A stretch of DNA of 64,000 nucleotides from IMGVR_UViG_3300027899_000001:186001-250000, one strand, 5' to 3'; positions 1,110 through 49,047 are shown, counted from the stretch's first letter. Numbers and translations: made by a program. The notes: generated by a model not told the origin, from the letters alone.

Positions 1110-4100
1110 TTATTTTTCAAAGAGTGTAAACTTAACATAATAAGAATAATTTAAATTCTTAGGAATTGTTATCAAATATTTCCAATCTTTATTTTCAAAA
1201 GATAATTTAGTTGTATAATTTATTTTTATATTTTCTGAAAATTGAGTATCATATGTATAATATAATAATGAAGTAGCATAACTTTTTGTATAAAGATTTA
1301 ATTTAATTTTACTAATGCTTATGTTATAATATGAAATGATAGTGTCATTAATATAAGAATTTATAATTGCGTCTGTTGCTGCTAATCCTGCCCAGTTATT
1401 TAAAAATAGTTTGTTATCTTTAAATAAATTAGATATAATTTTAGTTAAATTATAACTTAAAATATAATTATTAGTATCAGTTATAACTGAAGCTACTGTT
1501 ACATCAAAGGAATCTAAAACTAAATAATCTGGAAGTTTTATTAATTTTGATCCAAAAAATGATGGTAATTCTAAAGATGATTCATAACCATTAATTAATG
1601 TAGATTCTTGTAATGTATAATAATTTGCATCCCAAAGAGCATTAAATACATTAAATTCTTCTTTATAATCAATAGCATTGGCAGCGCTAACATCTGTTTC
1701 AGAAACTCTAGTAGTAACTTTATTGTACCATAATTGATCAATATTTTTATATGAACGTAAATTTGTATTACTTAATGTAAAATCAAGATTCAATATATCC
1801 ATTAAATCTTTGTCTTCGTTAGATTTAAAATCTAATATAGAATCAAATTTAGGTGTATACCAGCCATTATATGTTGTTAAATTATTAAATTGTCGCGGAG
1901 TATTTAATGCAAAATAAAATGGACACGTTTTAAATGTAAGATTATCATATATTACATTTTCTCTAATAATATACGCCATAATGTAATCATTTTCATTATT
2001 AAGAAAACTAGTTAATGTATTTATATTACATGTATTATTTGCATATAAATTCCAGTTATTTTGATATAAATATCCGTAATTAACTATACTATCTCCATAT
2101 GTATTTACACTTCTGCTATATGAATAATCAACAGTTTTAGAAAAAGTATTATAAGAATATGGTGCATATAATGTATCGGGATAATTTATTAATGTATTTA
2201 AATTTGTAAATGCATTAAATGTAGTATCGAAACTTTTTAGTCCATGACTTAATTGTGCATACGGTCTTATTAAACTTACATCGTATGAAATAAAATCTTT
2301 ATATTCATACATGTTAACAAGAGGTTTATTTAAAACATCTGTTCTAACTATAAATGGAGTTTTTTCAAATGTCCAATTAGGACCATTTTTCAGTGATTTC
2401 CATTGTACACCAAGAGATACGTCATCCATTATTGATTTTCCGGTACCACCTCCATATGTAGGTGAACCATAAATGCCATTAGAATATCTTTTATTATAAT
2501 TTAATACATCTGCACCCTGGTACCATATCATTAAAACAGTTTTTGTGTTTTCATTTATAATAATTTCTATGGGTTTATTACTGTGTGCATTTCTTGAAGA
2601 AGTTGATATAAATGAAAATTTATATCTATTATAATCTTTAATATTTATAGTATTTTTAGCAACATCTTTAATACTTATAGATATGCTTAATCCCATAAAT
2701 AATATATCTATTGATTGTTTATAATCATTATAGTAACATAAAACAGAACGATTTATAGTATCATCAACTTCATTATTTGAAAATATTAATTTTGAAAAAA
2801 TATCATTATAGGGTTTTTCAAATATTAAATTTTTAATAGTTTTTCTATAAGTTATACCATCTTCTACATATTCCATTACATCATTAAGATCATGAAAAAT
2901 ATAACTTTGCCATGCTCTGGTTCCAGGTGTTAAATATTTAAATACGGGATATGTTATTTCTTGAGTATAATTATTTCCACTAGGAATAAAATTAGTAGGA
3001 AGTACAGAATCAAATATATTAGAATTAAATATTAATCTAAATGGATTATTTCGACAATCTGTGCCCAATCCTACCCATTTAGAAACAGTAGGAACCGTTA
3101 AACCATATTTTAAACGTGTAGTAGAATTATAATAATCATAAATGTTTTCTTCTGAATATGCTGAACCAGTTTTATAAGATGTATAATTATATGAGCCGTC
3201 TAATAAATTATATGTAATAAGAGTATCTGTAGTAGCTGATATATATGCACTAGAATTAAATGTGTTAAATCCCAATGGAAACATACTTGTATATCCAGAA
3301 TAATTTTGAGTTACATTACCTATAGTAATATATCCCGTGCCTGAAATAAGTTGATAAGAATCTTTAATTTCAATTACATTTGCGGTATTTGCTGGAACTG
3401 TTAAAAAATAAGTACTTATATCATCTTCTCTTTTATAAAAATATTCACTCGTAAAATTAAGAGTTGAAGAATCATACACGGTATAATCTATATCTTTTAC
3501 TGGATTTACTCCCATTAAAGAAATATTATAAGTTTGAATATCATAAGAATTCCAAAATCCTGTTACTGTTTGTATTTCTTCTGCAGTTTGAATTAAATAT
3601 CTATGTTCATGATAAGGATCTTGAATATATTGATATGAATCTATAAAATTAGAAGATATATCAAAGTTAATAATTAATTTATACCAATTATCTTTTCCTT
3701 GATATAAAGTATATTGACTTAAATTATCAGCTTCACTGGCATCGAAATTATATAATAAATTACTTCCTCTATTAAATAAATCTATAAATATTGTTCTTCT
3801 ATCTCCATATAATTCAAAATTTATTGGGCCATATTGCGCATCATAAGCGATTGTTTCAAAATTAGCATCTTCTGGCGTGAATCGACCAAAAAATGTTATA
3901 TCATCAGGACGTGCAGCACTATTAAATCCTGAACTGGCATTATTCCAATCATTCAAAGTTTGCGCTGTAATTCTTTGAAATTCCCAGCTTTCTGATGAAT
4001 CTGCAACATCATTAAGAAGAATAGCTGTCCAATTGCTTGCACTTAATCCAGTTGTAAAATAATTATCATTATAGTCTTCAAATCTATGAAATGCTTCTTT

Positions 4101-5846
4101 TATTGAATCTATTTGATCTTCTATACTTCCTGTTACTAAAAAGTTTGTTTGATAAATAGTAGGATAACCTCCAGGTTCAGTATATGTAGATACATATTTT
4201 TGGCAATTTGATACATCGGCTATACCATATGCTTCCCATATTTTATTTTGAGTTCTATTTATTATACGAAGATGTTCTCCTTGATGTAAATGATTATTAA
4301 TTCTTAATGTAATAAATGGAGTATATTCTTTTTTATTAACTACATTACTAAATATATTATTATTTGGATTACTTACATAATTATTTATATACCCTTCACT
4401 TCCATTTATTTGAGAAACAGATGTAATTCGTTTAAGAGTTTTTCCATCATTTATAACAAATAATCTATTTCTATATTCTGGCGAAATATCTCCCGCATTT
4501 GTAAATACAGATGAATTAATGAATGTGCTAAGATCTCTTCCATCAAGAGAAAGAATTCTTACATTTCCCGTTGAAAAATCATTATAATATGCTACTTTAT
4601 ATAAAATATTTTCAGTTAAATATAATCCAAAATAACGATTCATAGTATATGCACTAACATCATTATCATCAAAAATATATTCAATATTTAAAAGATTAGC
4701 GCTTAATAAATTATTTCTTTCAAACCCATTAGATACAAACGCATTTAATTCTGTAAAATTATTAATAGTTTTATTAAAATAATAAGGTGTTTCTGAACGT
4801 CCTGCTAATACACCTTTATCTACAGTAATTCCATACCATGTATTCGGATCTGCATCTGCGGTAGAAATACTTGGATCAGTTAAAGATAAAAATACTGGTG
4901 CAGGAAATTTAATTAAATCATTTCTATGAGTTTCTAAATATTTTCCTAATCCAGAATCATTTTTTAAACTCCATGTTTTAATAATGTCACTATTTTCAAA
5001 ATATTTTGACGCTAAGTATGAAAGAGAATCATTATTATATGTTTCTACATTATAAATACCCGGCATTCTAAACACACAAAAATAATCGGGGAGTTTACTA
5101 TTTATCCATATAGGAGCTAATAACGCATTATCTTCTGCATATAATTCATCTTCAAATAATCTTGCTCCATAATTATATGTCGTACGATACTGATCTTTAT
5201 ATTCTGTTTTAGGAATAGTTATATCTAAAGTATTTAAAGAATCTACTCTATAAAGTTCTCCTAAAGGAAGAGCGGTAAATACATTTCTAATATCGCTTGA
5301 TAATACGCTTTCAGAAGAAACACTTTGTTTTCTATATTTTTTATTTGACAAAATATCAGATACTTTAAACGTATCTAAATATAAATTTTCACTTACATCA
5401 ACTATAAGTTTTATGTTTCCTGTGAATTTAGGATTGGTTCTTAATACTAAATATGATGTTTCATTATCAACTAAAACTTCTTTGTTTTCATATGTATTAA
5501 ATCCGCCAGCAATTATTGTAGGTCTATTGAGAATAGTAACATAATCATTATAAAGAAAACTTCCCGTTGAATCACTAATATTAAATGATATCGTTATATC
5601 AAATTCAGAGACACTTCTTGTATAAATATGAAATGCAGCGCGAGTAGCAATATCATTTATTTGTAATCCATATAAATATACATTTGTACAACAATCATAA
5701 AGATCAATTCCATTTGCATATAATACATTTCTTTCGGAAATAGAATTAACAGTTATATAGTAGTCAGAAGCATCATGAACATAAGTTAAAATGGCTTCTG
5801 GGTTTTGTGAAGATAAAATTACTGTATCGTTAAAATATTTAAACAT
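1110..5846 (-). CDS. Large virion structural protein (tail/baseplate-associated), 1578 aa
   Basis: Long N/Y/S/T/D-rich, probably beta-rich ORF in the structural operon; many D-x-S motifs; no enzymatic motif recognised. Confidence 0.6.
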   Translation of the reverse strand: MFKYFNDTVILSSQNPEAILTYVHDASDYYITVNSISERNVLYANGIDLYDCCTNVYLYGLQINDIATRAAFHIYTRSVSEFDITISFNISDSTGSFLYNDYVTILNRPTIIAGGFNTYENKEVLVDNETSYLVLRTNPKFTGNIKLIVDVSENLYLDTFKVSDILSNKKYRKQSVSSESVLSSDIRNVFTALPLGELYRVDSLNTLDITIPKTEYKDQYRTTYNYGARLFEDELYAEDNALLAPIWINSKLPDYFCVFRMPGIYNVETYNNDSLSYLASKYFENSDIIKTWSLKNDSGLGKYLETHRNDLIKFPAPVFLSLTDPSISTADADPNTWYGITVDKGVLAGRSETPYYFNKTINNFTELNAFVSNGFERNNLLSANLLNIEYIFDDNDVSAYTMNRYFGLYLTENILYKVAYYNDFSTGNVRILSLDGRDLSTFINSSVFTNAGDISPEYRNRLFVINDGKTLKRITSVSQINGSEGYINNYVSNPNNNIFSNVVNKKEYTPFITLRINNHLHQGEHLRIINRTQNKIWEAYGIADVSNCQKYVSTYTEPGGYPTIYQTNFLVTGSIEDQIDSIKEAFHRFEDYNDNYFTTGLSASNWTAILLNDVADSSESWEFQRITAQTLNDWNNASSGFNSAARPDDITFFGRFTPEDANFETIAYDAQYGPINFELYGDRRTIFIDLFNRGSNLLYNFDASEADNLSQYTLYQGKDNWYKLIINFDISSNFIDSYQYIQDPYHEHRYLIQTAEEIQTVTGFWNSYDIQTYNISLMGVNPVKDIDYTVYDSSTLNFTSEYFYKREDDISTYFLTVPANTANVIEIKDSYQLISGTGYITIGNVTQNYSGYTSMFPLGFNTFNSSAYISATTDTLITYNLLDGSYNYTSYKTGSAYSEENIYDYYNSTTRLKYGLTVPTVSKWVGLGTDCRNNPFRLIFNSNIFDSVLPTNFIPSGNNYTQEITYPVFKYLTPGTRAWQSYIFHDLNDVMEYVEDGITYRKTIKNLIFEKPYNDIFSKLIFSNNEVDDTINRSVLCYYNDYKQSIDILFMGLSISISIKDVAKNTINIKDYNRYKFSFISTSSRNAHSNKPIEIIINENTKTVLMIWYQGADVLNYNKRYSNGIYGSPTYGGGTGKSIMDDVSLGVQWKSLKNGPNWTFEKTPFIVRTDVLNKPLVNMYEYKDFISYDVSLIRPYAQLSHGLKSFDTTFNAFTNLNTLINYPDTLYAPYSYNTFSKTVDYSYSRSVNTYGDSIVNYGYLYQNNWNLYANNTCNINTLTSFLNNENDYIMAYIIRENVIYDNLTFKTCPFYFALNTPRQFNNLTTYNGWYTPKFDSILDFKSNEDKDLMDILNLDFTLSNTNLRSYKNIDQLWYNKVTTRVSETDVSAANAIDYKEEFNVFNALWDANYYTLQESTLINGYESSLELPSFFGSKLIKLPDYLVLDSFDVTVASVITDTNNYILSYNLTKIISNLFKDNKLFLNNWAGLAATDAIINSYINDTIISYYNISISKIKLNLYTKSYATSLLYYTYDTQFSENIKINYTTKLSFENKDWKYLITIPKNLNYSYYVKFTLFEK

Positions 5847-5858
5847 ATTTATATTTTA

Positions 5859-7001: not shown

Positions 7002-7024
7002 AATTTTATTTTTTTATTTTTTAT

Positions 7025-8223: not shown

Positions 8224-11200
8224 TTAAATTCCAGCATATGCAACTATATTTGATCTAATTAACATATTACCAGAAGAATCAAGATACATTAATTTTAATC
8301 CAGTTGTAGCTGATCTAAATACTAAACCAGATGTACCAGATGGTTCTAATGTAAATGATCCAATTCTTACTCTGTTAACACTAATATCACCTTGAACAAA
8401 TAAAGAACTATTAATTGTTAAATTACCTGTAAGAGTTCCTCCTGTAAGATTTAATTTAGTTGTAGATAAATTTGATATAGAAGTATCTCTAAATCCTAAT
8501 GATCCATCAGTATACGCTTTAGTTACATCTGGTGATGCTATACTTGGTTCAAGAATTCCTGCTACCCATTTAAATTTACTTGTATTCAAAGATGCATTTG
8601 GAATGTAAGTGGCTCTTACTGTAGCCAATGAAGCATCAGTAGTATTAACTCTAATTGTTAATGTTGATGTTGATGTATCATTGGTGCTAATTTTTAATGA
8701 TAATGTTGCAATAGAAACATCTCTTGTTAATAAAGAACTATCAACATAGGCTTTAGATACTCCTCCTGCAACTGTACTAACATCTACAATAACTTGATTT
8801 CCTACCCATGCAAATCCTGAGCCTAAAGAAGAGTTTGCAAGATAAGTAGCTTTTACTAAAACAATTGATGCATCAGATGATACGCTCTTTTTTGATAAAT
8901 TTGATATAGAAGTATCTCTTATAGATAAAGAACTATCTACATATAACTTACGATGATATAAAATATCTGCATTAGTAGTATCATTTAATGATGCTTCAAT
9001 TGCTGCTATACGAATATCTCTAACTAATAAAGAACCATCTACATATACTTTAGTAACATCTCCTGTTCCTCCACCTGCTCCAGCACTTGCATTTAAATAT
9101 CCACCACTCCAATAAAAACCTGTTCCTAAAGAAGTGTTTGGAATATATATGCCTTTTATGTATATTATAGAAGCATCTGTAGAGTTAAGTTTAACCGTAA
9201 GTGTTCCTACTGAAACTTCTGTAGTATTATGTCTTAAAGTTAAAGTATATAATGAAGCATCAGCAGTATTTAATTTTGTTGTTAATGTTCCTATTGAAGA
9301 ATCTTGTACTATACCTCTAGTATTTAAATAAGAAATTGATGTATCAAGTATAGATACTCTTGTTTGTACAAATTGATTAGTAGCAATTTGTGTACTTGCA
9401 TCATAAGGATTTGCATTTGTTACAGATCTTGGCGTTCCAGTTAATTGTGGATCTAATAAATTAGCTTTAGTTGATGCTAATGATGCTATAGTTATATCTC
9501 TTACTAATAATGAAGCATCTACATAAAGTTTAACATTTGCTATAGACACGTCTCTTAATGATAACGAACCATCTACATATACTTTAGTTGTTCCGCTACC
9601 TGAAATACTTGGTTCAAGATAACCGCCGACCCATGTAAAATAACTAACATTTAAAGAAGCATTTGGAATATAAGTAGCCTTTATTAAAACAATTGAAGCA
9701 TCTCGTATTGATAAACTTCCATCTGTATAAGGTTTCCAGTATTTAGTGCTTGCGTCAAGTTTATTTATTGAAACTTCTGATGCAGCAATAAGAGCATCTC
9801 TTGAAGCTAAAGATCCATCAACATATCCTATTGTAACTCCTCCTGCTGGTAAACTAACGTCTACATACCAAGTATTGTTTCCTGTATTCCATGAAAATCC
9901 TGCTCCTATTGAAGCACTGGGAACGTAAGTGGCTTTTATTAAAATAATTGATGCATCTGTATTATTAGCTCTTGCTGTAAGAGTTCCAACTGAAGTTTCT
10001 GTGATAACTCTTCGCGTATTTATGTATACCATAGATACATCTCTTACTAATAATGAACTATCAACGTAAGCTTTAGTTACGCCACCACTTAAACTACTTG
10101 GTTCAAGATAACCTCCAACCCATTTAAAATAACTAACATTTAAAGAAGCATTAGGAATGTAAGTAGCTTTTATCAAAGAAATAGAAGCATCTCGTATTAA
10201 TAAACTTGCGTCAACATAAGAAAATGTAGCATAAGAACTTCCGCCACTTCCACCAGCACATGCATCTAAATATCCATTATTCCATAATAAACCTACACCT
10301 AATGAAGCACTAGGTATGTAAGCAGCTTTTATATAATTATCTTGTGCATCAACATATGCTTTAGATACATCACCGCCACTTCCAGCACCAGTATAGCCTG
10401 CATTAAATACAACAGGCACTTCAAATGAAATTGAACCATCTCCAATAGTTAAATATGGAGTAATTGATCCTGAATAAAATGTTATTCCTCTATCATTAGT
10501 TTTACTACCAAATTGTAAAGGAGAACCGTATTCTAAAAGAACATTTCCACTAGTGTCTCTTATTGCATTTTCAAGTATAAGATCTTTAATTTTAACACTT
10601 ACATCAAATTGAGCAGGATATAAAGGATTATTTGTAAAAAATCCAAGATTTCCATATTTCATATAAATAGAACAGTCAACAAGCGTTTTTCCATTGTTAG
10701 AAAACATAGGAATAGCATTCGGTGTTCCAGATATTCCTAATGTACCGGTGTTTATTTGATATTGTAAATCAGATATTTGATTTTCAATTTCTGTTTGATT
10801 TGCTGTAATATCAAGATATTGTTCTGTAATATAACTAATTGTTCCTGTTTGTTGATTTAATATTACAAGAGTTTTATTTAAACTATCAAATACCTGAGAA
10901 AAATCTGTAAGTATTTCTTGTGATGATGTTGTATCAGTTACAATAGCCTGCGTATCATCTAACATATAATCAGACTTAATATTGAGTCTAAATGAATACG
11001 ATGTTCCAAATCCTGAAGGTCCACTTTGAAGTTTTGTTATTGATGGAAGTGTAATTTCATTTAATGGATAATTTTGTGTATTTCCACTTGGCGGATCTAA
11101 AAATAAAACTCCTAATAAATTAGTTGCTAATACTGTATCTAATGCTTTATTATAAACTGAATAATAAATCATGATTGCGTTAAAATCAAACGCATCATCT

Positions 11201-12249
11201 TCAGAATAACCATTAGGTGCAGGCAAAGCTAAACTATCAAATGTTAATGCAGAATCTCCAAAAATAGTTTTTAAATTATCAAGATTATATTCAATAGAAA
11301 GACAATCAACTTTAGAACGTTTAAATTGAATTCCCGGCTCAACATATTGAAGATTTATATTATAAATTCCAGATGCAATATATTCTGAACTATCAGTATA
11401 ATAATTATTATCATATGTTATTGGTAAATTTTCAAATGTCCACCACCAACCATTATTCCAGCTTCCTGTACTATTATCATATTGCATAGTATAGGTACTT
11501 ACATAATTAGTTACTGATAAACTTGAATCAGCTAAATCATAATAGGCAGTTATATCTAATGCATCTGGATGAGGTTTAAGATAAGATTCTCTTCCTAAAA
11601 TGTTTGTATTTCCATTGATTATTGATATGCCGTGTTTGTAATTATCATCTTCAACTTGTTTAAAATAAACTGGAGTTTGTCCAAAAGATGTAGGAACTAA
11701 AACATAAGTTTCGTTGTATGTTCCAAATGTATCAGTACGTACAGAACCGGCACTAATTTGACCAATGCATTTAACAACAGAATTATATCCTACTGAAGAA
11801 TCCGTATCAGTTTCTTCTTTCCAATATTTTCCAGCAGAAGTATCTATAGATGTCCAACGAATTGCGCCAGTTTCTTTTAACCATTTCCAAAATACTCTTT
11901 CAGAAATAGTTGTTTGTAATGAAGCGTTATAACTATTTTGACCTAATAAATTTGTTTCAAGGTTTAAAGCATAATTTTGAAAGGATTCGGCAACAATAAT
12001 TCTTCCATCTTTTATACTTGCACCAAACATTTCATACGCTCCCGGAATTGCAAGAACATTGAATCTATTTTGTTGCATATTATCAGGAGCATCAATAGAC
12101 GGAATATTCAACAAAGCAAAATGAGACATTTTAACAATGTTATTACGTTCATTGATGTTTAATCCAATGTCTTCAAGCGCAGAACTAAAAGTATAAATAG
12201 TTCCTCCTTGAGTTCGCATTCTTTTAACAAATGGTGTTATAGTTGCCAT
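8224..12249 (-). CDS. Tail-fibre-like protein: globular N-terminal domain plus repeated stalk, 1341 aa
   Basis: N-terminus MATITPFVKRMRTQGGTIYTFSSALED; coiled coil near residues 450-500; repeated KxYVDxSLxxRDxSI and YIPNASL..W.GGYLEPS units; LTGGTLTGNLTI fibre motif near the C-terminus. Confidence 0.65.
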   Translation of the reverse strand: MATITPFVKRMRTQGGTIYTFSSALEDIGLNINERNNIVKMSHFALLNIPSIDAPDNMQQNRFNVLAIPGAYEMFGASIKDGRIIVAESFQNYALNLETNLLGQNSYNASLQTTISERVFWKWLKETGAIRWTSIDTSAGKYWKEETDTDSSVGYNSVVKCIGQISAGSVRTDTFGTYNETYVLVPTSFGQTPVYFKQVEDDNYKHGISIINGNTNILGRESYLKPHPDALDITAYYDLADSSLSVTNYVSTYTMQYDNSTGSWNNGWWWTFENLPITYDNNYYTDSSEYIASGIYNINLQYVEPGIQFKRSKVDCLSIEYNLDNLKTIFGDSALTFDSLALPAPNGYSEDDAFDFNAIMIYYSVYNKALDTVLATNLLGVLFLDPPSGNTQNYPLNEITLPSITKLQSGPSGFGTSYSFRLNIKSDYMLDDTQAIVTDTTSSQEILTDFSQVFDSLNKTLVILNQQTGTISYITEQYLDITANQTEIENQISDLQYQINTGTLGISGTPNAIPMFSNNGKTLVDCSIYMKYGNLGFFTNNPLYPAQFDVSVKIKDLILENAIRDTSGNVLLEYGSPLQFGSKTNDRGITFYSGSITPYLTIGDGSISFEVPVVFNAGYTGAGSGGDVSKAYVDAQDNYIKAAYIPSASLGVGLLWNNGYLDACAGGSGGSSYATFSYVDASLLIRDASISLIKATYIPNASLNVSYFKWVGGYLEPSSLSGGVTKAYVDSSLLVRDVSMVYINTRRVITETSVGTLTARANNTDASIILIKATYVPSASIGAGFSWNTGNNTWYVDVSLPAGGVTIGYVDGSLASRDALIAASEVSINKLDASTKYWKPYTDGSLSIRDASIVLIKATYIPNASLNVSYFTWVGGYLEPSISGSGTTKVYVDGSLSLRDVSIANVKLYVDASLLVRDITIASLASTKANLLDPQLTGTPRSVTNANPYDASTQIATNQFVQTRVSILDTSISYLNTRGIVQDSSIGTLTTKLNTADASLYTLTLRHNTTEVSVGTLTVKLNSTDASIIYIKGIYIPNTSLGTGFYWSGGYLNASAGAGGGTGDVTKVYVDGSLLVRDIRIAAIEASLNDTTNADILYHRKLYVDSSLSIRDTSISNLSKKSVSSDASIVLVKATYLANSSLGSGFAWVGNQVIVDVSTVAGGVSKAYVDSSLLTRDVSIATLSLKISTNDTSTSTLTIRVNTTDASLATVRATYIPNASLNTSKFKWVAGILEPSIASPDVTKAYTDGSLGFRDTSISNLSTTKLNLTGGTLTGNLTINSSLFVQGDISVNRVRIGSFTLEPSGTSGLVFRSATTGLKLMYLDSSGNMLIRSNIVAYAGI
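8480..10370 (-). repeat. Imperfect coding repeats YVDxSLxxRDxSI...KATYIPNASL...W.GGYL
   Basis: Visible in protein and DNA, e.g. near-identical ~100-nt blocks at ~9610-9715 and ~10095-10200. Confidence 0.8.
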
Positions 12250-40287: not shown

Positions 40288-42186
40288 ATGGAATTATTTC
40301 AGACTACTCGCGTGAGAATGTCAGAGCTTTATCAAGATGCTCTTACATTTATCACAAATACCTATGGAGACCTTGGACAATATTTCACAATGGCTTCTCC
40401 TATGGGACAATTACTTCAAGTAATTCTTCATTATGGAAGAATGATTTTATTTTATGTTGAAGATTCTGTAACTGAATTAAACATTAAAACTGCATCAAGA
40501 CCACAAAGTATAAAAGGTCTTGCAAGTTTAACTGGTCATAATCCTTCAAGAGCTATGGCAGCAAGAGGAACATTAACATTATCATATAATGGTTCTAAAC
40601 TTCCTACATATGCAAATGTAATTTCTATTCTTAATTATACTCAACTTACAAATAGTCAAAATGGCTTAACATATACTATTATTCTTCCGGGACAAGAAAC
40701 ACGATTAGATTTAACAAATATTACAAATTATATTGAAGTTAATATCGTTCAAGGAAAAATAGAATTTCAACAAGCAACTGGAACAGGAGATGCATTACAA
40801 TCATTTAATTTTCAAAATAAAAAGGGTGCATTTATTGATAATTATTACGTAAATGTTTATGTTGATGGAGTTAAATGGGCTATTGTAGATTCTATTTTAG
40901 ACATGACTATACAACAACCTGCAGTTATGGTTAAAACAGGACAAACAGGAGGAATAGACATTTTCTTTGGAAATGGTTATAACGGTGCTGCTCCAAGAAT
41001 GGGTTCAACTATATTAGTTGAACATCTTATTACTGATGGAGAAACTGGAAATATAAACAGTATGACTACTCCTACTACAAATATATGGAAATTTATAACT
41101 AAAGGATATGCACTTAATGGAGAAGAAATTGATATTAATAAATATGTTTCAATTGCAATAAAAAATGATATAATGTTTGGTGCTCAAGAAGAACCGCTTT
41201 ATCTAACAAGATTATTAGCTCCAAATATGTCAAGGAGTTTTGTTCTTGCAAACACAAACAATTATATTTATTTTCTTAGAAGATTAAATATGTTTACTGT
41301 TATAGATGCTATTCCTGGGTTTGCAACATTTGAAGATCAATATACGCTGGACAAATATAATCAAGCTCAAACAACATATGAAAAAATAAGTACAGAATAT
41401 AGAAATTTAACTGCAACATACGGAGTAACTTCAACACAAGCAACTGCTAAAAAAGTTGAATTAGATAATGCTCAACAACAATTATATACTTATCAAGCAG
41501 CACTTGAAAAACAAAAACAAGATGATAATACAGTTTACTTATTTTTAGTTCCTGATATAAATAAAAGAATACAACCCGGAGAAAATTATTATAATTGTAA
41601 TATGGCTGCATTTTCATTATCAGATGGAGAAAAATTAGCAATATTAGATTTAATAGAACAAAGTGGTCAAAGAATTTTAACAGTTGATAATGTAATATTA
41701 GATTTACAATTTCCAAGATTCACTTTAAATATGTCTCTTATATTATGGGAAGGAGCTTCTTTTGATACCGTAAGACAAAATATTATTTCAGCAACTTCTG
41801 ATTATTTTTTACAAAATACAAGAAGAGACAGAATTCCTGTTTCTGATTTAGTAAGAATTATTGAAGGATTAGATGGAGTGGATTCTGTAAATGTATGGTT
41901 TGATGCAGCAAAAGAAAATTTTGATAAAGTATATAAAAATCATTATGGAATTGATGATTATGGTGATATTATTCTTGAAAGATATGTTAAAGATGCATTT
42001 GGAAATGAAGTGTCTATAAAAGATGTATATCCTATTATTAGAGGAGGGTTTGAAAATGTATCTGGCGTATTTTACGAAGATAGTTTAACAAAAAATAAAT
42101 TATCATCATTAAATATTCAAGTTAGAGGCTATACAGCCAAAAACTTAAATTCAGAACATAATATAGCAATTGTTAATAATCTATGA
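40288..42186 (+). CDS. Baseplate wedge subunit, gp6-like, 632 aa
   Basis: ELNIKTASRPQSIKGLASLTGHNPSR, IFFGNG..G..P and Y/HLITDGETGN are gp6/baseplate-J-like motifs; follows the gp25-like gene. Confidence 0.75.
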   Translation: MELFQTTRVRMSELYQDALTFITNTYGDLGQYFTMASPMGQLLQVILHYGRMILFYVEDSVTELNIKTASRPQSIKGLASLTGHNPSRAMAARGTLTLSYNGSKLPTYANVISILNYTQLTNSQNGLTYTIILPGQETRLDLTNITNYIEVNIVQGKIEFQQATGTGDALQSFNFQNKKGAFIDNYYVNVYVDGVKWAIVDSILDMTIQQPAVMVKTGQTGGIDIFFGNGYNGAAPRMGSTILVEHLITDGETGNINSMTTPTTNIWKFITKGYALNGEEIDINKYVSIAIKNDIMFGAQEEPLYLTRLLAPNMSRSFVLANTNNYIYFLRRLNMFTVIDAIPGFATFEDQYTLDKYNQAQTTYEKISTEYRNLTATYGVTSTQATAKKVELDNAQQQLYTYQAALEKQKQDDNTVYLFLVPDINKRIQPGENYYNCNMAAFSLSDGEKLAILDLIEQSGQRILTVDNVILDLQFPRFTLNMSLILWEGASFDTVRQNIISATSDYFLQNTRRDRIPVSDLVRIIEGLDGVDSVNVWFDAAKENFDKVYKNHYGIDDYGDIILERYVKDAFGNEVSIKDVYPIIRGGFENVSGVFYEDSLTKNKLSSLNIQVRGYTAKNLNSEHNIAIVNNL

Positions 42187-42938: not shown

Positions 42939-45900
42939 ATGAATTTATCACAGTGGAAAATATATGATAAGGCTGGTGACTACATCAATTGGACGCCTGC
43001 TTCTAATATAAAATTAAGTTTTAACTCAGCTACAGGCATAGGTGCAGAGGGGTACCTAGTTACCGATCCTAGCGGATTTGCTATATATGCAAAAATAACT
43101 GATGGTGGATATTTGTATGATGATGTTATAACAGCTTATTATACATACGCGTTTAGCACTGGCGGAGAAATATTATTAACGCCTACAGATGCATCTATAT
43201 TAACCACAGATGTTTCGATATTTAGTCCTGATGGAATGAATACTAAAAGTATTAGTGGTCTTGCATTGGATCTAGATGCTAGTTTTTCTTATCCCTCTGT
43301 TACTTATGCTGCAGCTATTTTCTTAAAACCCATTTCAGTAGGATTAGTCGAAACAGAAACTCTTTATATTTTCCAAGAAATTGCAACTGATACATATATA
43401 CGCCCATATGATGCAAGCAACTCCACTATATTATTTAGATTCGAAGGAGATGATGTAGAAATTCAATTTTTTACAGTAGATGAAGATACAACAGAAATAA
43501 CTTGGACACGTCAATTACAATTTGATTTATCATTATACACTTTAGATACTCCTATAACTCTTAATATAGGATTTAGAGCAGAAACTGAAGGAGTATTTGA
43601 AAGAATATTAAGAGCATATCATAAAGTTGGAGATGAATATTTTATTTTAGCTGATATTCTTGTTAATGCCGAATCAGTTGGAGAAGATGAAAGATTTAGA
43701 ACACTTATAACAAACTTTGGTCTTCCAGATCCAAAAGATATTCCACAAATTTTTAAGGAAACAGATATTAACGAAGATTTGCCCGATTGGGATGTTCTTA
43801 ATTATAAATCAAAACATCTTATACTTGAGTATGATCAAATAATGCCATATATAGGAACCTATAAAGCGTTAATAAATGCAATTAAATGGCTGGGCTATGA
43901 TGATATTTATGTGCGTGAATGGTTTAAAAACGTTAAAGATAATACTAAATTATCTGTAATTGTTTCTTATGATGCTAAAGATAGAACACAAACAATGTTA
44001 AGATTTGATGCTAATCAAAGAAAAACACTTAAAAAATTAAATCAATTATCTTTAGTTTATTGTTTAACACGCGAAACAGGAGAAATAGATGATTGGGGAA
44101 CACCATTAACTGAAAATTGTTATTCTTATAACATTAAAGAGGTGTTTATAAAATTAATGGCATTAAAACAATGGCTAGAAAGAAATATTATAGGAATAAA
44201 TTGTAGAATAGTAGATCTTACCGGTGAAGGCGTTTATTTTGAAAGAATACAAAATCTTATTTATACAACTGATAATATTGGATTTGAATATAATGTTTCA
44301 CAAACATTAACTCCATATGGACCAGATCATGATAGTGAATTAGTAACTGGAGATGCCAGTGTAAGATTAACATTTTTAGAATTAACTAATACAGCTGTAC
44401 AGGATCTTAAATATCGATTTATAGATATGGCAGAAACTGCTTGGAATCCAAATGATCCAAATATATATTATTCTTTAGATGATCCATCATATCTAGCAGA
44501 TCCAAGTAGCTTTTTAATTATGGGAGCAACTTTTGATTATCCCTTTGTTAACATTGCTGATATTATGTATAAATTATCAGTTCAAAAGGAATTAGGCGGT
44601 GTTATAGGAGAAACTCTTGTTACAAATCCATTATTTGTTTATGAAAATGAAATTAGATTTTATAATACATACGACACATCTTCTATATTTTATGATGTTT
44701 CAACTGATTTAACAATTTTACTTGAAAAAGCATATTTAAGAGATCCAAGTATTGATGAATGGGTTAATTCAATTGCATATACTATTTATCACGAACCTTC
44801 TAATTATTATGATTATGTTTTAGAAACATCAGCAGGTTTTAAAACATATACTAGTGGATATGTTACATTTACTCCTGATACATCAGCAAAATTACAATAT
44901 GCAGTAGATTCTAATTATAAAGTTCCTTTATTAACTTTTCAATATTTTAGTTATACAGATGCTAGTGGATATAATCAAAATTTTGGAGATAAAGAATATA
45001 TTCTTGATATTGTAGATGGAAAAATTTATATGAATTCAGGAATAACAGATAGTTCTGATAATTTAGAAATGTATATCAATTTTAATTATGATACAAGTTT
45101 AATAGAACAACAAATTACTGTTAATGCTGTTTATCAATCTCCTCGAATGAGACTTTTTCAAGTAGACCCGAGTATATATTATTGGGCAGATCCTTCAGGA
45201 TTATCAGGAGGAAACGACCCGAGTATTTATATTATTGATAATAGTATTTATACATTTAATATTCATCATATTGGAGATTATAATATTGATATGTATGCGT
45301 GGGATTCATATAATACAATGATGTATAATCCTGCAAGAGAACCGTATCCAGTATGGGTTAAATATCCTACAATATATTTCTTAGTAGATAATTCAAGTTA
45401 TATGGGATATGATGTTAGTAAATATATGTCCTATTGGGAAGTAAGTACATTAATATCTAATCATCCATTTCCTATTTATGATAGAGATATTCCATTACAA
45501 GGATTACAATTTTTAATTGATGCGAGTGGAAATCCATATATAGAAGTTCCTTCTATCACATATTTTCAAGATGTGCCAGAACCTAATTCATATAATAGAT
45601 TTTTTAATTTAACTGAAAGAGTTGTATCGATATCAGGAACTTCTCTTGTGATAGATGATGATTTTCAAAAATTTTATACAGGTGATAACATTGCAATCGT
45701 TAAATTTGATAAAGGAAAATATGCATTAATATCTGAAGTAAGTTCTAATATACTTACATCAAGTTATTTACCAACATCTAATCCAACATTAATTACAGTT
45801 GATAATATACCCGCTGATTTTATAATAGATCCTTCAACAGATATTTACATTCTAAACGATACATATAGATATGTAACAAATTCAAGTAATAATAATAATA

Positions 45901-46547
45901 ATTTTATAACAGATGTAAGCGGCTATATATTTCAAGTAAATCAAGCAGTAGGAGTAATTGTATCTGATGGAATTACTGGTTATTCTTGGGGATCTACATA
46001 TAGAGTTATTGATGTTAGTGGAGTTACTCATAGATTTAAAGATACTATTCCTGATTTTTTCCTTGATGATCCTAGTAGATATACTATTACTGTTAAACAT
46101 GCTTTTTCAACATATTCAGAATTTACTGCTCCTACATATTTTGCATCAGAATCAGATAACAAATTTAGCGTTTATTTAAAAACTTCATATTGTCAAGAAT
46201 ATTATGTAGACAACACATTTGTTTATATGAATAATATTTTTGATCATGATCATATAAATTTTCAGTGGTATGATCCTTCTTTAGATTTAGTAAACAGCGA
46301 ATTTTATTATTATAAAAAACCTATTTGGGTTGATACTGGTACACTAGTTATTTTAAGAGCTGAATATGATCCAAGTAATTATATGTTAGATCAAAAAAAT
46401 ATTTGGACAGCCAGATTCAATGATAATGATGCAGTATATTTTAAAGTTTATAATGAAAGTGTGCCTATATTATTTGGATTTACTACACACTTTAAGATAA
46501 ATGTTGAAAGTTATGATAAATATGGAAATATAAGTAAGACAGAATAA
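42939..46547 (+). CDS. Large baseplate protein, gp7-like core, 1202 aa
   Basis: YIGTYKALINAIKWLGY resembles the KGT..(A/S)I..L...LG tail-protein-I/gp7 motif; downstream of the gp6-like gene. Confidence 0.55.
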   Translation: MNLSQWKIYDKAGDYINWTPASNIKLSFNSATGIGAEGYLVTDPSGFAIYAKITDGGYLYDDVITAYYTYAFSTGGEILLTPTDASILTTDVSIFSPDGMNTKSISGLALDLDASFSYPSVTYAAAIFLKPISVGLVETETLYIFQEIATDTYIRPYDASNSTILFRFEGDDVEIQFFTVDEDTTEITWTRQLQFDLSLYTLDTPITLNIGFRAETEGVFERILRAYHKVGDEYFILADILVNAESVGEDERFRTLITNFGLPDPKDIPQIFKETDINEDLPDWDVLNYKSKHLILEYDQIMPYIGTYKALINAIKWLGYDDIYVREWFKNVKDNTKLSVIVSYDAKDRTQTMLRFDANQRKTLKKLNQLSLVYCLTRETGEIDDWGTPLTENCYSYNIKEVFIKLMALKQWLERNIIGINCRIVDLTGEGVYFERIQNLIYTTDNIGFEYNVSQTLTPYGPDHDSELVTGDASVRLTFLELTNTAVQDLKYRFIDMAETAWNPNDPNIYYSLDDPSYLADPSSFLIMGATFDYPFVNIADIMYKLSVQKELGGVIGETLVTNPLFVYENEIRFYNTYDTSSIFYDVSTDLTILLEKAYLRDPSIDEWVNSIAYTIYHEPSNYYDYVLETSAGFKTYTSGYVTFTPDTSAKLQYAVDSNYKVPLLTFQYFSYTDASGYNQNFGDKEYILDIVDGKIYMNSGITDSSDNLEMYINFNYDTSLIEQQITVNAVYQSPRMRLFQVDPSIYYWADPSGLSGGNDPSIYIIDNSIYTFNIHHIGDYNIDMYAWDSYNTMMYNPAREPYPVWVKYPTIYFLVDNSSYMGYDVSKYMSYWEVSTLISNHPFPIYDRDIPLQGLQFLIDASGNPYIEVPSITYFQDVPEPNSYNRFFNLTERVVSISGTSLVIDDDFQKFYTGDNIAIVKFDKGKYALISEVSSNILTSSYLPTSNPTLITVDNIPADFIIDPSTDIYILNDTYRYVTNSSNNNNNFITDVSGYIFQVNQAVGVIVSDGITGYSWGSTYRVIDVSGVTHRFKDTIPDFFLDDPSRYTITVKHAFSTYSEFTAPTYFASESDNKFSVYLKTSYCQEYYVDNTFVYMNNIFDHDHINFQWYDPSLDLVNSEFYYYKKPIWVDTGTLVILRAEYDPSNYMLDQKNIWTARFNDNDAVYFKVYNESVPILFGFTTHFKINVESYDKYGNISKTE

Positions 46548-46548
46548 T

Positions 46549-49047
46549 ATGATAATAGAAGTAATAGAAGGAAGCATATATAGATCAGCGTCTAAGACGC
46601 CTCCAATAGTATTGTTTATTCCTGCGCCAATTGCTTTAGCAGCAACAAATATTGGGCTTCATCAATTTGATGCCAATTGGGTATTTGATTCATCTATAGA
46701 AGGATATTATCTTGATGTTGCTGATAATAGTACATTTTCTTCTTTTGTATATAATAATTTAAATGTAGGAGACGTAAGTACTTATACTGTACTTGGTTTA
46801 AATTCTTCAACTAATTATTATTATAGACTTCGTGCTTATGTTGGTTTTATAAGTAGTCCTAATTCTAATATTATAGATACATCAACACTTACATTAGCTG
46901 CTCCTGTTGCAACTGCAGCTACAGATGTATCAACAAATTCATTTGTATCTAATTGGAATGATGTTTCAGAAGCTAATGGTTATTATCTTTATGTTTCTGA
47001 TAATAGTACATTTAGCTCATATGTTACAGGTTTTAATGGATTAAACGTAGCAAATGTATCAACATATTTAGTAACTGGAATTAGTGCTAATACAACTTAT
47101 TATTATCGTTTAAAAGCTTATGATAATGCTAGAACCAGTGATTATTCAAATATAATAAATACTAGTACAAATATAATGATGTACACGGCGTGTGCTACTT
47201 ATTCTCCATATTTTGTTTCAGTATCATCTTCTAGTGGATTCTTAAGTGTAGGCGCTTTAAATTCTAGTGTTGGAACAATAGGTAATTATGTAATAGAATG
47301 GAGATTAAATTCAAGTACGGGTTCTACAGTATTTGTTTCTGGATACGGAGTTGATCCTTCAATTCAATCACAACATCCTGTTGTAAATGAAGTAGTATTT
47401 GCAGGAACTCTTTATCCTATAATAAAATATACATATATAAATTCAGTAAAATATACTCTTGATTTTACTCCAGGCGCACGTTATAGTCCTGATTTTATAA
47501 ATTGCTTAAATCCAGTAGTAATTACTCCTATAGATTGCTGTACAGCTTTAGGAGTTGATCCAATATATCCTTATTATCTTTCATATAATAATGCTGCAGA
47601 TTTTGGTGTAAATAAATCTAGAAGTCTTAAATATGATATATGTCCTAGCGTAGCATACTTAGCTTGGGAATTTGATGCTTTTACAGTTCCAGAACAAATA
47701 AGATTCTATTATTGTACATCAACAAACTTTACTGGTATTTTATTAGATAATTTTATTCATGGCGCATTTCCTTTAACAACTAATTTATATCCTGCGAATT
47801 ATCCTGATGGAAGTGCAAGAACATATCAGAGACAATATAGAGGTGTTTATGGAATAAAATATATTACAGATCTTACAGATGTATCTCATAACACTGGTGA
47901 TTATGTAAGAATAGACATTACTGGTAGCGTATATGATCCAAGTAATAATAATACAAACTGGGATCTAAAAGTAAAATCGTTATATTCTATTGATCCTAGT
48001 TTTTATGATAGCAGTATTTCTAAAATTGCTTCTATAGATCCTTCATTATATTATTATGCAGATCCCGCATGTAGATATGATGTAAGTTATAATACATTAG
48101 AAATTTCACCATCATTCTCTAAAACTTCTCCAGCATCGCCGTTTATATGGAAATATATGGATGTATACACATATGTATTAAATCAAACAGGAAATAGTTT
48201 CATTAATCCTATAAATGATTCACTTAGATGGCAAAATATTACTAATTCAGCTTGGTTGTGGTATGGTGCTGGTGTAACTACAAATATGAATTTAAGTTCT
48301 GGACAAACAATAACAGCAACAAAAGATTCAAGCTATATGACATTTACATTTACAGATATAGCTGATTATAATAAATTTGCTTCTAATATCGCATCTATAA
48401 AAGCAGAACCAAATTACACTATTTGGCAAGGATTATCAAATACAAATGTACGATATTATGCATATTATCAAGTTCAATGTCCTAGTGCAGCAAGTGTAGG
48501 AGATAATTTACAAGATTATGCATTTCAGTTTCATTTATCAGCTGATATTTCATATAATGTTATTAATAAAACTATAGGTTTTCAATTTGTATCTCTTGTT
48601 AATAATATAACAGATTCTTCATGTGATAATTCATACGAACAAGCAGTATCAAGTATCAGTTCTATAAATAATATGAAAATTACGCCATGGCTTCCTATAA
48701 CAACACACGTAAGAAAAGTCGATCCTGTAACTGCTTTATGGTATAATACTACACTTACACATGAGATGACTAGAGAATCATTTACAGAATTTGATATACC
48801 AGGACCAATGACAAACAATTTAGTAGATTTAGCTGCTTTAGGATTTGTTTGGAATCCTATAGGATGGTCAAATTTCACAAATAAATGGACATTATTTAGA
48901 AACTGGGATAGAGTTAATTTTACTGGTAATGCATCTACTCATGATTATAGAATGAAACACTGGAATTTACAAAGAAAAATGTTCTTAAGAACTGATGTTA
49001 GCGCAGATACTGCATGGGAAGTTGTATATGATACGAGCATTGCATAA
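46549..49047 (+). CDS. Fibronectin type III domain virion protein, 832 aa
   Basis: Two tandem FN3 repeats (W...GYYL.V...Y.V.GL...T.YYYRL.AY...S..SN). Confidence 0.75.
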   Translation: MIIEVIEGSIYRSASKTPPIVLFIPAPIALAATNIGLHQFDANWVFDSSIEGYYLDVADNSTFSSFVYNNLNVGDVSTYTVLGLNSSTNYYYRLRAYVGFISSPNSNIIDTSTLTLAAPVATAATDVSTNSFVSNWNDVSEANGYYLYVSDNSTFSSYVTGFNGLNVANVSTYLVTGISANTTYYYRLKAYDNARTSDYSNIINTSTNIMMYTACATYSPYFVSVSSSSGFLSVGALNSSVGTIGNYVIEWRLNSSTGSTVFVSGYGVDPSIQSQHPVVNEVVFAGTLYPIIKYTYINSVKYTLDFTPGARYSPDFINCLNPVVITPIDCCTALGVDPIYPYYLSYNNAADFGVNKSRSLKYDICPSVAYLAWEFDAFTVPEQIRFYYCTSTNFTGILLDNFIHGAFPLTTNLYPANYPDGSARTYQRQYRGVYGIKYITDLTDVSHNTGDYVRIDITGSVYDPSNNNTNWDLKVKSLYSIDPSFYDSSISKIASIDPSLYYYADPACRYDVSYNTLEISPSFSKTSPASPFIWKYMDVYTYVLNQTGNSFINPINDSLRWQNITNSAWLWYGAGVTTNMNLSSGQTITATKDSSYMTFTFTDIADYNKFASNIASIKAEPNYTIWQGLSNTNVRYYAYYQVQCPSAASVGDNLQDYAFQFHLSADISYNVINKTIGFQFVSLVNNITDSSCDNSYEQAVSSISSINNMKITPWLPITTHVRKVDPVTALWYNTTLTHEMTRESFTEFDIPGPMTNNLVDLAALGFVWNPIGWSNFTNKWTLFRNWDRVNFTGNASTHDYRMKHWNLQRKMFLRTDVSADTAWEVVYDTSIA

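What the first reader, a model, noticed from the sequence alone, without database searches (positions are those of the whole stretch)
1110..49047. Pervasive D-x-S tripeptide enrichment in outer virion proteins: possible modification sequon
Seen (hand counts): about 29 D-x-S in the 1202-aa protein and about 22 in the 832-aa protein (DPS, DAS, DVS, DTS, DSS, DNS), roughly three times what composition suggests. They are also dense in 8224..12249 and 1110..5846. They are missing from the gp7-like core (about residues 200-470 of 42939) and scarce in S1, Hsp20, the nucleases and the 1150-aa protein. The proteins are not homologous, so this looks convergent. Inference: a sequon for virion glycosylation or another modification; it resembles N-x-S/T and differs from the Bacteroidota D-(S/T)-x O-glycosylation motif.
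Basis: partly seen in the sequence, partly recalled or inferred. Interest (0 to 1): 0.65.

Follow-up and report, generated by a model that had tools for sequence, protein, structure and literature searches.

The report
Conserved Asp-x-Ser motif on phage fibres
The outer baseplate and fibre proteins of this 405-kb phage carry three to four times too many Asp-x-Ser tripeptides, conserved across its whole clade, and the phage also encodes a large sugar-synthesis gene island, so the motif may be a new attachment site for virion sugars, though this is unproven.

Summary
The hand counts are exact: 29 D-x-S against 8.4 expected in the 1202-aa protein and 22 against 5.7 in the 832-aa protein. The 1341-aa protein has 42 against 9.8 and the 5002-aa protein 83 against 28.7. 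In the complete 405-kb genome of the same phage, 8 of 392 ORFs carry the whole excess, and all are fibre or outer-baseplate proteins. Only D(i)-S(i+2) is enriched, not D-x-T, N-x-S, S-x-D or other spacings. The middle residue is small and uncharged, and the signal lies at protein level. In more than 100 gp7-like homologues, 24-25 sites are positionally conserved. Homologues in crAss-like and Lak phages lack the Ser at those sites.

Many copies sit in known structural consensus motifs (LRR-like, PKD, DUF285, hairpin turns). The phage also encodes a ~29-kb glycan island inside its structural region, plus two GT2 genes beside a second fibre module.

The sequon reading is therefore plausible (about 0.4) but unproven. 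A purely structural turn motif is nearly as likely (about 0.35). It is neither N-x-S/T nor the Bacteroidota D-(S/T)-x motif.

The parts
42939..46547 (+). 1202-aa baseplate-periphery protein (gp7-like by position, downstream of the gp6-like wedge gene). It has 29 D-x-S: 6 in residues 1-196, none in 197-471, and 23 in 472-1202.
   Evidence: PHROG 28177 is matched by residues 126-443. There are more than 100 full-length homologues, all enriched 2.1-4.3 fold. 24-25 site columns are conserved. No internal repeats were found. The AF2 model has pLDDT 82.5, with sites mostly in turns after strand ends.
46549..49047 (+). 832-aa fibre or receptor-binding protein with two FN3 domains (about residues 22-207) and a C-terminal module. 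It has 22 D-x-S.
   Evidence: The FN3 match is and the repeat. Homologues split into 11 enriched ones from syntenic myophage relatives and 11 non-enriched ones. The non-enriched ones form one clade that includes crAss-like phage contigs.
8224..12249 (-). 1341-aa fibre protein. The N-terminal ~500 residues are shared with Lak and Flavobacterium phages. The C-terminal part (584-1291) consists of repeats with the unit YVDxSLxxRDxSI...GFxW. It has 42 D-x-S.
   Evidence: 70 proteins share the repeat, and all are enriched 1.9-6.1 fold.
12289..27297 (-). 5002-aa giant fibre or adhesin built of about 10 super-repeats of ~460 aa, each with an LRR-like unit and a PKD domain. It has 83 D-x-S, nearly all inside repeat consensus (LDVSGL, WDLGDGS, ayDCSLnG).
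   Evidence: See (PKD).
1110..5846 (-). 1578-aa protein with only a marginal excess (18 against 9.7).
   Evidence: It has no family match.
27301..32556 (-). 1751-aa collagen-like fibre protein, not significantly enriched (6 against 2.9). It is part of the same fibre module and an alternative candidate target of the glycan machinery.
40288..42186 (+). gp6-like baseplate wedge protein, a negative control with 0 D-x-S against 2.1 expected.
   Evidence: See (phrog_219).
53549..57001 (-). 1150-aa protein, a negative control at expectation (4 against 3.8).

Best explanation
D-[V/A/P/S/T/G/C/I]-S is a short linear motif held under selection across one clade of huge Bacteroidota-type myophages. It occurs on the exposed parts of their outer baseplate and fibre proteins.

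Shown:
- The Asp and the Ser two residues later behave as one unit.
- They usually sit in a tight turn between two hydrophobic strands, or on the outward face of a strand.
- The middle residue is small and uncharged.
- The motif is kept at the same positions over deep divergence in this clade. Homologues in other phage lineages lack it.

Inferred: the motif is the acceptor site for a phage-encoded modification of the serine. The most likely modification is O-glycosylation in the cytoplasm by some of the phage's own glycosyltransferases, using sugars made by its nucleotide-sugar island. The neighbouring Asp would serve as the recognition or activating residue, by analogy with the Asx-turn of N-x-S/T. 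The result would be sugar-coated fibres and baseplate periphery. The structural turn role and the sequon role are compatible, because a pre-existing Asp turn would have gained a Ser.
For: 1. Eight of 392 ORFs of the complete genome hold the entire excess, and all are fibre or outer-baseplate proteins.
2. The same tripeptide ranks first in three families with no profile-level homology.
3. The signal is strictly specific. D-x-T, N-x-S, N-x-T, S-x-D and other spacings are not enriched. Charged and amide residues at x number 12 against 82 expected. Generic turn propensity does not predict this.
4. D and S are lost together three times more often than independence predicts, 172 against 59. Ser is seldom replaced by Thr.
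5. The motif is clade-specific at homologous positions. At the 11 columns conserved as D-x-S in the myophage clade, the crAss-clade homologues of the 832-aa protein keep D in 48%, S in 12% and both in 3%. Lak gp7 homologues keep D but not S.
6. Large tail proteins of PTm1, MaF61, MA9V-1, LR756500, LR745206, LR756502 and two crAss-like contigs show essentially no enrichment. The one exception is a 634-aa MaF61 ORF at 2.6 fold, p 0.004.
7. The phage encodes many sugar enzymes between its gp23-like and gp24-like capsid genes: GDP-mannose 4,6-dehydratase, NDP-hexose 2,3-dehydratase, a DegT aminotransferase, an RmlD-like reductase, C- and FkbM-type methyltransferases, three GT25, a GT10 fucosyltransferase, below-threshold GT8-, GT47- and GT2-like matches, and an AGT-like GT-B. 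Two further GT2 genes lie 5 kb from the second D-x-S-rich fibre module.
8. GT25 is present in 8 of 11 clade contigs; the three without it are 14-19% fragments. It is also present in the mildly enriched Lak phages. It is absent from six non-enriched relatives.
Against: - There is no direct evidence that any Ser is modified, and no D-x-S sequon is known.
- Many sites lie in motifs that are structural in unrelated, unglycosylated proteins (LRR-like LDVSGL, PKD GDGS, DUF285 DxSnVTnM).
- In the gp7 family the whole excess consists of old, position-conserved sites, while variable sites occur at chance level. That pattern is typical of structural residues.
- When Ser is replaced it is often replaced by D, N or T, which are turn formers.
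- Eight of 29 sites in the 1202-aa model are in strands, and burial could not be measured.
- Non-enriched huge phages also have GT2 genes, and LR756501 has a GT25.
- High and low enrichment in the 832-aa family differ by a single branch, so there is only one evolutionary contrast.
- The island could instead serve DNA modification (it has an AGT-like gene), the collagen-like fibres or host surface glycans.
- Bacterial multi-FN3 proteins have a baseline of 1.4 fold, and a few reach about 3 fold or more.
Confidence: 0.4

Rival explanations
1. The motif is purely structural. D-x-S would be an Asx-type turn or cap (a type I turn closing a hairpin, a helix N-cap, or the exposed pair of an LRR, PKD or DUF285 strand). 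This lineage's beta-rich fibre modules would use it again and again, each family would inherit it vertically, and internal repeats would multiply it. No modification would be involved.
For: - The flank profile is three hydrophobic residues, then D-x-S-x, then two hydrophobic residues. In the AF2 model 21 of 29 sites are in coil, about ten within one residue of a strand end, and several are D-P-S helix caps.
- Known module consensus motifs contain D-x-S.
- Sites are strongly conserved in position with no turnover.
- Ser is most often replaced by D, N or T.
- The 1341-type repeat carries the motif in all 70 relatives found.
- Bacterial multi-domain FN3 proteins show a mild baseline excess, and some reach about 3 fold or more.
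Against: - Generic turn propensity would also enrich N-x-S, D-x-T, D-x-D and D-x-N, and would allow E or K at x. None of this is seen.
- This reading gives no reason why more than five unrelated families in one genome converge on the same tripeptide. Homologous or analogous proteins of nine other phage genomes, plus the tail proteins on two crAss-like contigs, use other turn sequences at the same columns.
Confidence: 0.35
2. The motif is a ligand- or metal-binding surface. Exposed Asp/Ser pairs repeated along fibres and the outer baseplate would form a multivalent, lectin-like or cation-binding face. That face would contact a host surface polysaccharide or stabilise the virion.
For: The motif is restricted to the host-contacting proteins. 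D and S lie on the same face at i,i+2 with an inward-pointing small x. In 10 of 42 sites of the 1341-aa protein the pattern extends to D-x-S-x-S.
Against: No lectin or MIDAS fold was detected. Receptor-binding surfaces normally diversify, whereas these sites are conserved across more than 100 homologues. Nothing was tested directly.
Confidence: 0.12
3. The excess is an artefact of composition, internal repeats or a DNA-level motif.
For: Repeats do inflate the counts in the 5002-aa protein, the 1341-aa protein and the N-terminal part of the 832-aa protein.
Against: Shuffles that keep composition give z of 7-11. The repeat-free 1202-aa protein and the non-repeat parts stay enriched. Mixed TCN and AGY serine codons rule out a DNA motif. 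The excess is conserved in more than 100 homologues.
Confidence: 0.02

Closest known systems
Phage-encoded virion glycosylation in mycobacteriophages (Freeman et al. 2023, as summarised in PMC12619734)
   Same: Glycosyltransferase genes are carried by the phage within or next to the structural genes, and virion proteins are the proposed targets.
   Different: In mycobacteriophages the glycans sit at the C-termini of capsid and tail-tube subunits. Here the capsid protein is not enriched (1 against 1.1), the candidate sites are internal D-x-S turns of fibre and baseplate proteins, and nothing has been shown biochemically. I could not read the original paper because it is not held.
General O-glycosylation of Bacteroidota at D-(S/T)-(A/I/L/V/M/T) (PMC8550257)
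   Same: An Asp close to the acceptor hydroxy residue, a likely Bacteroidota host, and fucose-related enzymes in the loci (PMC8698959).
   Different: The spacing differs (D-x-S, not D-S/T-x). Thr is not used. The canonical motif is under-represented in these proteins, 51 against 82. That system acts in the periplasm, whereas phage virions assemble in the cytoplasm (the latter from general knowledge).
N-x-S/T sequon
   Same: A three-residue motif with a hydroxy residue at +2, lying in an Asx-type turn.
   Different: Position 1 is Asp, not Asn, and N-x-S/T is not enriched. Pro is the commonest middle residue in the gp7 family, whereas Pro is excluded from N-sequons (general knowledge).
Autonomous glycosylation machinery of chloroviruses and giant viruses (PMC5408694, PMC9614988)
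   Same: Virus-encoded nucleotide-sugar pathways for rare sugars, together with many glycosyltransferases, used there to decorate capsids and fibrils.
   Different: Those are eukaryotic viruses with different sequons. In the phage the target of the island is unknown.
Structural consensus motifs containing D-x-S: LRR LDLSxN, PKD WDFGDGS, DUF285 WDVSNVTNM
   Same: They account for most sites in the 5002-aa and 2290-aa proteins.
   Different: They do not account for the gp7-like protein, the C-terminal part of the 832-aa protein or the 1341-type repeat, which match none of these families.
Moraphages and Lak megaphages (PMC12619734)
   Same: Large Bacteroidota-associated T4-like myophages with several core glycosyltransferase orthogroups and Hsp20. 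Lak tail proteins show a mild D-x-S excess of 1.5-2.2 fold.
   Different: This phage is 405 kb, while moraphages reach 307 kb. It reads with code 11, unlike Lak. Membership of either group was not tested.

Membership tests
N-glycosylation sequon N-x-S/T | Asn at position 1, with S or T at position 3 | tested here: not met
   N-x-S and N-x-T are at expectation in all enriched proteins and in the gp7 family.
N-glycosylation sequon N-x-S/T | The middle residue is never Pro | tested here: not met
   Pro is the commonest middle residue in the gp7-like family.
Bacteroidota O-glycosylation motif D-(S/T)-(A/I/L/V/M/T) | The acceptor S/T lies directly after the Asp and is followed by A/I/L/V/M/T | tested here: not met
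   51 observed against 82 expected in the eight D-x-S proteins.
Bacteroidota O-glycosylation motif D-(S/T)-(A/I/L/V/M/T) | Substrates are exported to the periplasm | not tested
   No signal-peptide analysis was run. Virion proteins are expected to be cytoplasmic (inference).
Phage-encoded virion glycosylation | Phage glycosyltransferase genes lie in or beside the structural module | tested here: met
   The island lies between the gp23-like and gp24-like genes. Two GT2 genes lie 5 kb from fibre module B.
Phage-encoded virion glycosylation | A glycan is detected on virion proteins | not testable with these tools
   This needs mass spectrometry or glycan staining of virions or recombinant proteins.
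Type I beta-turn / Asx-turn hairpin motif | Asp at i and a hydroxy residue at i+2, in a short loop between two strands | tested here: met
   Shown by the AF2 secondary structure and the flank profile of the gp7 family. It holds for most sites, not all.
Type I beta-turn / Asx-turn hairpin motif | Equivalent turn formers (N at i; T, D or N at i+2; E or K at i+1) are used interchangeably | tested here: not met
   Only D-x-S is enriched, and charged x is nearly absent.
PKD / DUF285 / LRR repeat modules | A significant match to the family profile | tested here: met
   PKD_4 matches the 5002-aa protein at 1.3e-44. DUF285 matches the 2290-aa protein at 5.6e-62. The LRR-like unit is recognised by its pattern only, with no Pfam LRR hit.
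T4 gp7 baseplate wedge protein | Homology to gp7, or a gp7 fold, together with the gp25-gp6-gp7 gene order | tested here: inconclusive
   The gene order is met: the gp6-like phrog_219 gene lies upstream, and GPW_gp25 is present in syntenic relatives. There is only a match to the unannotated PHROG 28177. The Foldseek search of the whole model was uninformative.

The most novel reading that the evidence does not exclude
D-[small]-S is a previously unknown serine O-glycosylation sequon. A clade of huge, probably Bacteroidota-infecting phages would use it to coat their own fibres and outer baseplate with rare sugars, made and attached by phage-encoded enzymes in the cytoplasm. This would be a phage counterpart of the autonomous glycosylation of chloroviruses and mimiviruses.
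Probability: 0.35. Interest if true: 0.85.

Novelty: new variant of a known kind. Interest (0 to 1): 0.62.

Why it matters
If the motif is a sequon, it would define the first sequence rule for phage virion glycosylation. It would also link a large orphan glycan island in huge phages to concrete targets. And it would imply that fibre glycans shape host recognition, stability or evasion of anti-phage binding in Bacteroidota-rich habitats.

The rule is directly testable: about 25 conserved sites in one protein, Ser only, small middle residue. Even if the motif is only structural, the finding shows something unusual. One lineage imposes a single turn sequence on many unrelated fibre families, which calls for an explanation and gives a simple sequence marker for this clade's outer virion proteins.

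Tried and rejected
- Composition and shuffle artefact: rejected.
- DNA-level motif: rejected, because serine codons are mixed.
- Internal repeats as the full explanation: rejected for the 1202-aa protein by BLAST of fragments and by profile-profile comparison of seven segments. A first self-BLAST was uninformative because the self-hit masks internal hits.
- Hidden homology among the three families: none found; hhalign probability is below 1%.
- Sequence search of solved structures: no useful relative.
- Foldseek on the whole 1200-residue model: only generic strings of beta-sandwich domains, with TM below 0.1.
- AlphaFold on the 1341-aa repeat region: pLDDT 43, unusable. The weak hint of helices in the YVDxSLxxRDxSI segments is not relied on.
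- Literature searches for a D-x-S motif or YVDGS repeat: only MIDAS D-x-S-x-S and unrelated hits. The key mycobacteriophage paper is not held.
- Hanks-type kinase and GT1 in the complete genome: none.
- 'Any glycosyltransferase' as a marker of the enrichment: rejected, since non-enriched huge phages have GT2 genes.
- GDP-mannose-dehydratase-type genes are not clade-specific either.
- Depletion of the canonical Bacteroidota motif looked interesting, but bacterial FN3 proteins show the same depletion.
- TAG=Q was used only for the Lak-A1 and Lak-B7 loci, where the DNA itself demands it: ORF coverage rises from 0.16 to 0.87.


Full report
**What the window is.** The window has 28% GC. It holds the baseplate and fibre region of a T4-like myophage. 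Identified genes include a gp6-like wedge protein, a hub protein, a head-tail adaptor, Hsp20, homing endonucleases and a collagen-like fibre. The nearest named relatives of its proteins are Lak megaphages of Prevotella and jumbo phages of Tenacibaculum, Chryseobacterium and Flavobacterium. The FN3 pair of the 832-aa protein is 45-54% identical to FN3 domains of Bacteroidota T9SS proteins. A Bacteroidota host is therefore likely, but this is an inference.

The window's assembly is a 133-kb fragment. The same phage exists as a complete 405,016-bp record with terminal repeats. I fetched that record whole. Window coordinate w corresponds to position 186,000 + w of that genome.

**Check of the observation.**
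- 1202-aa protein: 29 D-x-S against 8.4 expected.
- 832-aa protein: 22 against 5.7.
- 1341-aa protein: 42 against 9.8.

Shuffle z-scores run from 7 to 11. The 1578-aa protein is only marginal, with 18 against 9.7. D-x-S ranks first among 1600 gapped residue pairs in the 1341-, 1202- and 832-aa proteins.

The rest of the 133-kb contig is at expectation, 131 against 123. In the complete genome, 8 of 392 ORFs carry the whole excess, and the remaining 381 that are not individually significant (p >= 0.01) give 361 against 337.5. The four extra proteins form a second fibre module that runs across the genome ends:
- a 1295-aa collagen-like fibre with an endosialidase-chaperone domain;
- a 2290-aa protein with DUF285 and PKD domains;
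- a 1722-aa collagen-like protein carrying the same YVDGSL repeat as the 1341-aa protein;
- a 5523-aa protein with beta-helix and FN3 domains.

**How specific the signal is.** Only the pair D at i and S at i+2 is enriched. D-S, D-xx-S, D-xxx-S, S-x-D, D-x-T, N-x-S, N-x-T, S-x-S, D-x-D and D-x-N are all at or below expectation. The middle residue is V, A, P, S, C, G, T or I. K, R, E, D, Q and N together occur 12 times against 82 expected, and large aromatics are also rare. Serines in the motif use both TCN and AGY codons, as elsewhere in these genes, so the constraint acts on the protein.

**How much repeats explain.**
- The 5002-aa protein consists of about ten super-repeats. Its sites sit in an LRR-like unit (LDVSGL), in the PKD hallmark (WDLGDGS) and in a few other repeated units.
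- The 2290-aa protein carries DUF285 repeats whose family consensus itself contains D-x-S.
- The C-terminal 700 residues of the 1341-aa protein are repeats of YVDxSLxxRDxSI...GFxW.
- The first 207 residues of the 832-aa protein are two FN3 copies.

So a good part of the raw count is a few motifs multiplied, and some of those motifs are structural in unrelated organisms.

Repeats are not the whole answer, however. The 1202-aa protein has no internal repeat by fragment BLAST or by profile-profile comparison of seven segments. The non-repeat parts of the other proteins stay enriched: 14 against 3.8 in 832-C and 9 against 3.5 in 1341-N. The three families show no homology to each other at profile level.

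**Conservation.** The 1202-aa protein has more than 100 full-length homologues at 40-64% identity. Every one is enriched, with a median of 3.3 fold and a minimum of 2.1. In 107 aligned homologues, 24-25 column pairs carry D-x-S in at least half of the sequences. Control motifs give 0-2 such columns. The variable sites, about 6 per protein, are at chance level.

The motif residues are more conserved than other residues of the same type: Asp 0.74 against 0.51, and Ser 0.71 against 0.42. Thr replaces Ser in at most a few percent of sequences at most sites. D and S are lost together 172 times against 59 expected under independence, so they act as a unit.

**Structural setting.** The AlphaFold model built from 93 sequences has mean pLDDT 82.5.
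- 21 of the 29 Asp residues are in coil, about ten of them within one residue of a strand end.
- Several D-P-S sites start short helices.
- Eight are within strands.

The family-wide flank profile is three hydrophobic residues, D-x-S-x, then two hydrophobic residues. That describes a tight turn between two strands. Such sites are likely to be exposed, but I could not compute accessibility because coordinates are not returned.

**Clade specificity.** This is the most informative result.

Homologues of the 832-aa protein fall into two groups. Eleven are enriched 2.5-4.1 fold and eleven are at 0.9-1.7 fold. One well-supported branch separates the groups. The enriched ones that I could place lie in syntenic relatives of this phage, or on another contig with phage replication genes. 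Two non-enriched ones lie in crAss-like phage contigs, where no protein is enriched. At the 11 column pairs conserved as D-x-S in the enriched group, the other group has D in 48%, S in 12% and both in 3%.

The Lak homologues of the 1202-aa protein likewise keep the Asp at many of our sites but not the Ser. Large tail proteins of PTm1, MaF61, MA9V-1, LR756500, LR745206, LR756502 and LR756501 show no clear excess. Lak-A1 and Lak-B7 show a mild one, 1.5-2.2 fold in three or four tail proteins, at positions different from ours. Bacterial multi-domain FN3 proteins give a baseline of 1.4 fold, and a few reach about 3 fold or more.

The strong excess is therefore a trait of this phage clade. It cuts across unrelated protein families, which points to a factor acting in trans. 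The caveat is that the high/low contrast rests on very few independent evolutionary events.

Outside the window, between the gp23-like major capsid gene and a gp24-like paralogue, lies a ~29-kb block on one strand. It spans G000 4,935-34,231, which is positions 274,974-304,270 of the complete genome. It encodes:
- GDP-mannose 4,6-dehydratase (E 4e-128);
- NDP-hexose 2,3-dehydratase (2e-131);
- a DegT-type aminotransferase;
- an RmlD-like reductase;
- a sugar C-methyltransferase;
- FkbM and other methyltransferases;
- a radical-SAM/SPASM protein;
- two oxidoreductases;
- three GT25 enzymes;
- a GT10 fucosyltransferase;
- an AGT-like GT-B enzyme;
- weaker GT8-, GT47- and GT2-like matches.

Two more GT2 genes lie 5 kb upstream of the second fibre module. 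No Hanks-type kinase or GT1 was found.

GT25 occurs in 8 of 11 clade contigs, and the three without it are 14-19% fragments. It also occurs in both Lak phages and in LR756501. It is absent from six non-enriched relatives. Against this, GT2 genes are common in non-enriched huge phages, and dehydratase-type genes are not clade-specific. The association is therefore suggestive only.

**Weighing the explanations.** Several points favour a trans-acting reading, in which D-[small]-S is recognised as a linear motif, most plausibly as a serine O-glycosylation site:
- the same tripeptide appears in many unrelated outer proteins of one genome;
- specificity is strict, which generic turn propensity does not predict;
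- Ser has been gained next to pre-existing Asp turns in this clade only;
- a rich phage glycan machinery sits in the structural region.

Other points favour a purely structural reading:
- the sites are position-conserved with no turnover;
- they lie in hairpin turns, helix caps and well-known module consensus motifs;
- when Ser is lost, other turn formers often replace it.

A third possibility is an exposed Asp/Ser face for glycan or cation binding. I put these at about 0.40, 0.35 and 0.12. The first two are not exclusive, because a structural Asx-turn is exactly where a sequon would be expected to evolve.

**Comparison with what is known.**
- The motif is not N-x-S/T. Asn is not enriched, and Pro is the commonest middle residue.
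- It is not the Bacteroidota D-(S/T)-(A/I/L/V/M/T) motif (PMC8550257), which is under-represented here, 51 against 82. That system also acts on exported proteins.
- The closest functional precedent is phage-encoded virion glycosylation in mycobacteriophages (cited in PMC12619734). There the targets are the C-termini of capsid and tail-tube proteins.
- Another precedent is the autonomous glycosylation of chloroviruses and giant viruses (PMC5408694, PMC9614988).
- A recent paper on 'moraphages', Bacteroidota-associated relatives of Lak phages, reports four core glycosyltransferase orthogroups without assigning a target (PMC12619734). I did not test whether this phage belongs to that lineage.

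**Limits.**
- Accessibility, the fold of the trimeric fibres and any chemical modification could not be assessed.
- The model of the 1341-aa repeat region failed (pLDDT 43).
- The Foldseek search of the whole 1202-aa model was uninformative.
- The phylogenetic contrasts are few.

Noticed in passing
outside the window: G000 4,935-34,231 (complete genome 274,974-304,270): A ~29-kb one-strand island of nucleotide-sugar enzymes, methyltransferases and about eight glycosyltransferases lies between the gp23-like capsid gene and a gp24-like paralogue. Its enzyme set (2,3-dehydratase, aminotransferase, C-methyltransferase, GDP-mannose dehydratase, fucosyltransferase) points to rare deoxy, amino or methyl sugars.
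   Followed up: partly
window 12289-27297 (-): The 5002-aa protein is built of about ten super-repeats of ~460 aa, each combining an LRR-like unit with a PKD domain. It is one of three proteins above 2000 aa in this genome.
   Followed up: partly
window 27301-32556 (-), and the + strand ORFs at 27651-32009: The collagen-like gene has 43% GC against 28% for the genome. The long ORFs listed on the opposite strand over it are most likely shadows of the glycine-codon repeat, not genes.
   Followed up: no
window 46549-49047; loci L003 10001-12223 and L004 10001-11875: The C-terminal module of the 832-aa fibre protein is shared with crAss-like phage contigs that carry CrAss_Ring and MUZ genes. This indicates exchange of a fibre module between a huge myophage lineage and Crassvirales.
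   Followed up: partly
window 39582-40286 (+) and 52706-53554 (+): Two homing-endonuclease genes (PHROGs 314 and 655) sit inside the baseplate gene block.
   Followed up: no
complete genome 386,690-405,016 and 1-28,921 (loci L114, L120, L121): A second fibre module spans the genome ends and holds four more D-x-S-rich giant proteins. The 1722-aa ORF runs off the record's end, and I did not find the terminal repeat reported by IMG/VR as an exact match of the two ends.
   Followed up: partly
L001 (Lak-A1) and L118 (Lak-B7): The tail-gene regions of Lak phages read open only with TAG as a sense codon (ORF coverage 0.16 against 0.87). The window's phage reads open with the standard bacterial code.
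   Followed up: yes
window 52159-52596 (+) and 57001-57558 (-): An Hsp20 gene and a gene like 2',5'-RNA ligase are embedded among the baseplate genes. They keep the same positions in a syntenic relative (L006).
   Followed up: no
window 5859-7001 (-) and 7025-8194 (-): Two adjacent genes of 380 and 389 aa match consecutive halves of one 1092-position PHROG profile (29329). They look like a split or duplicated fibre-associated protein lying between two fibre genes.
   Followed up: no
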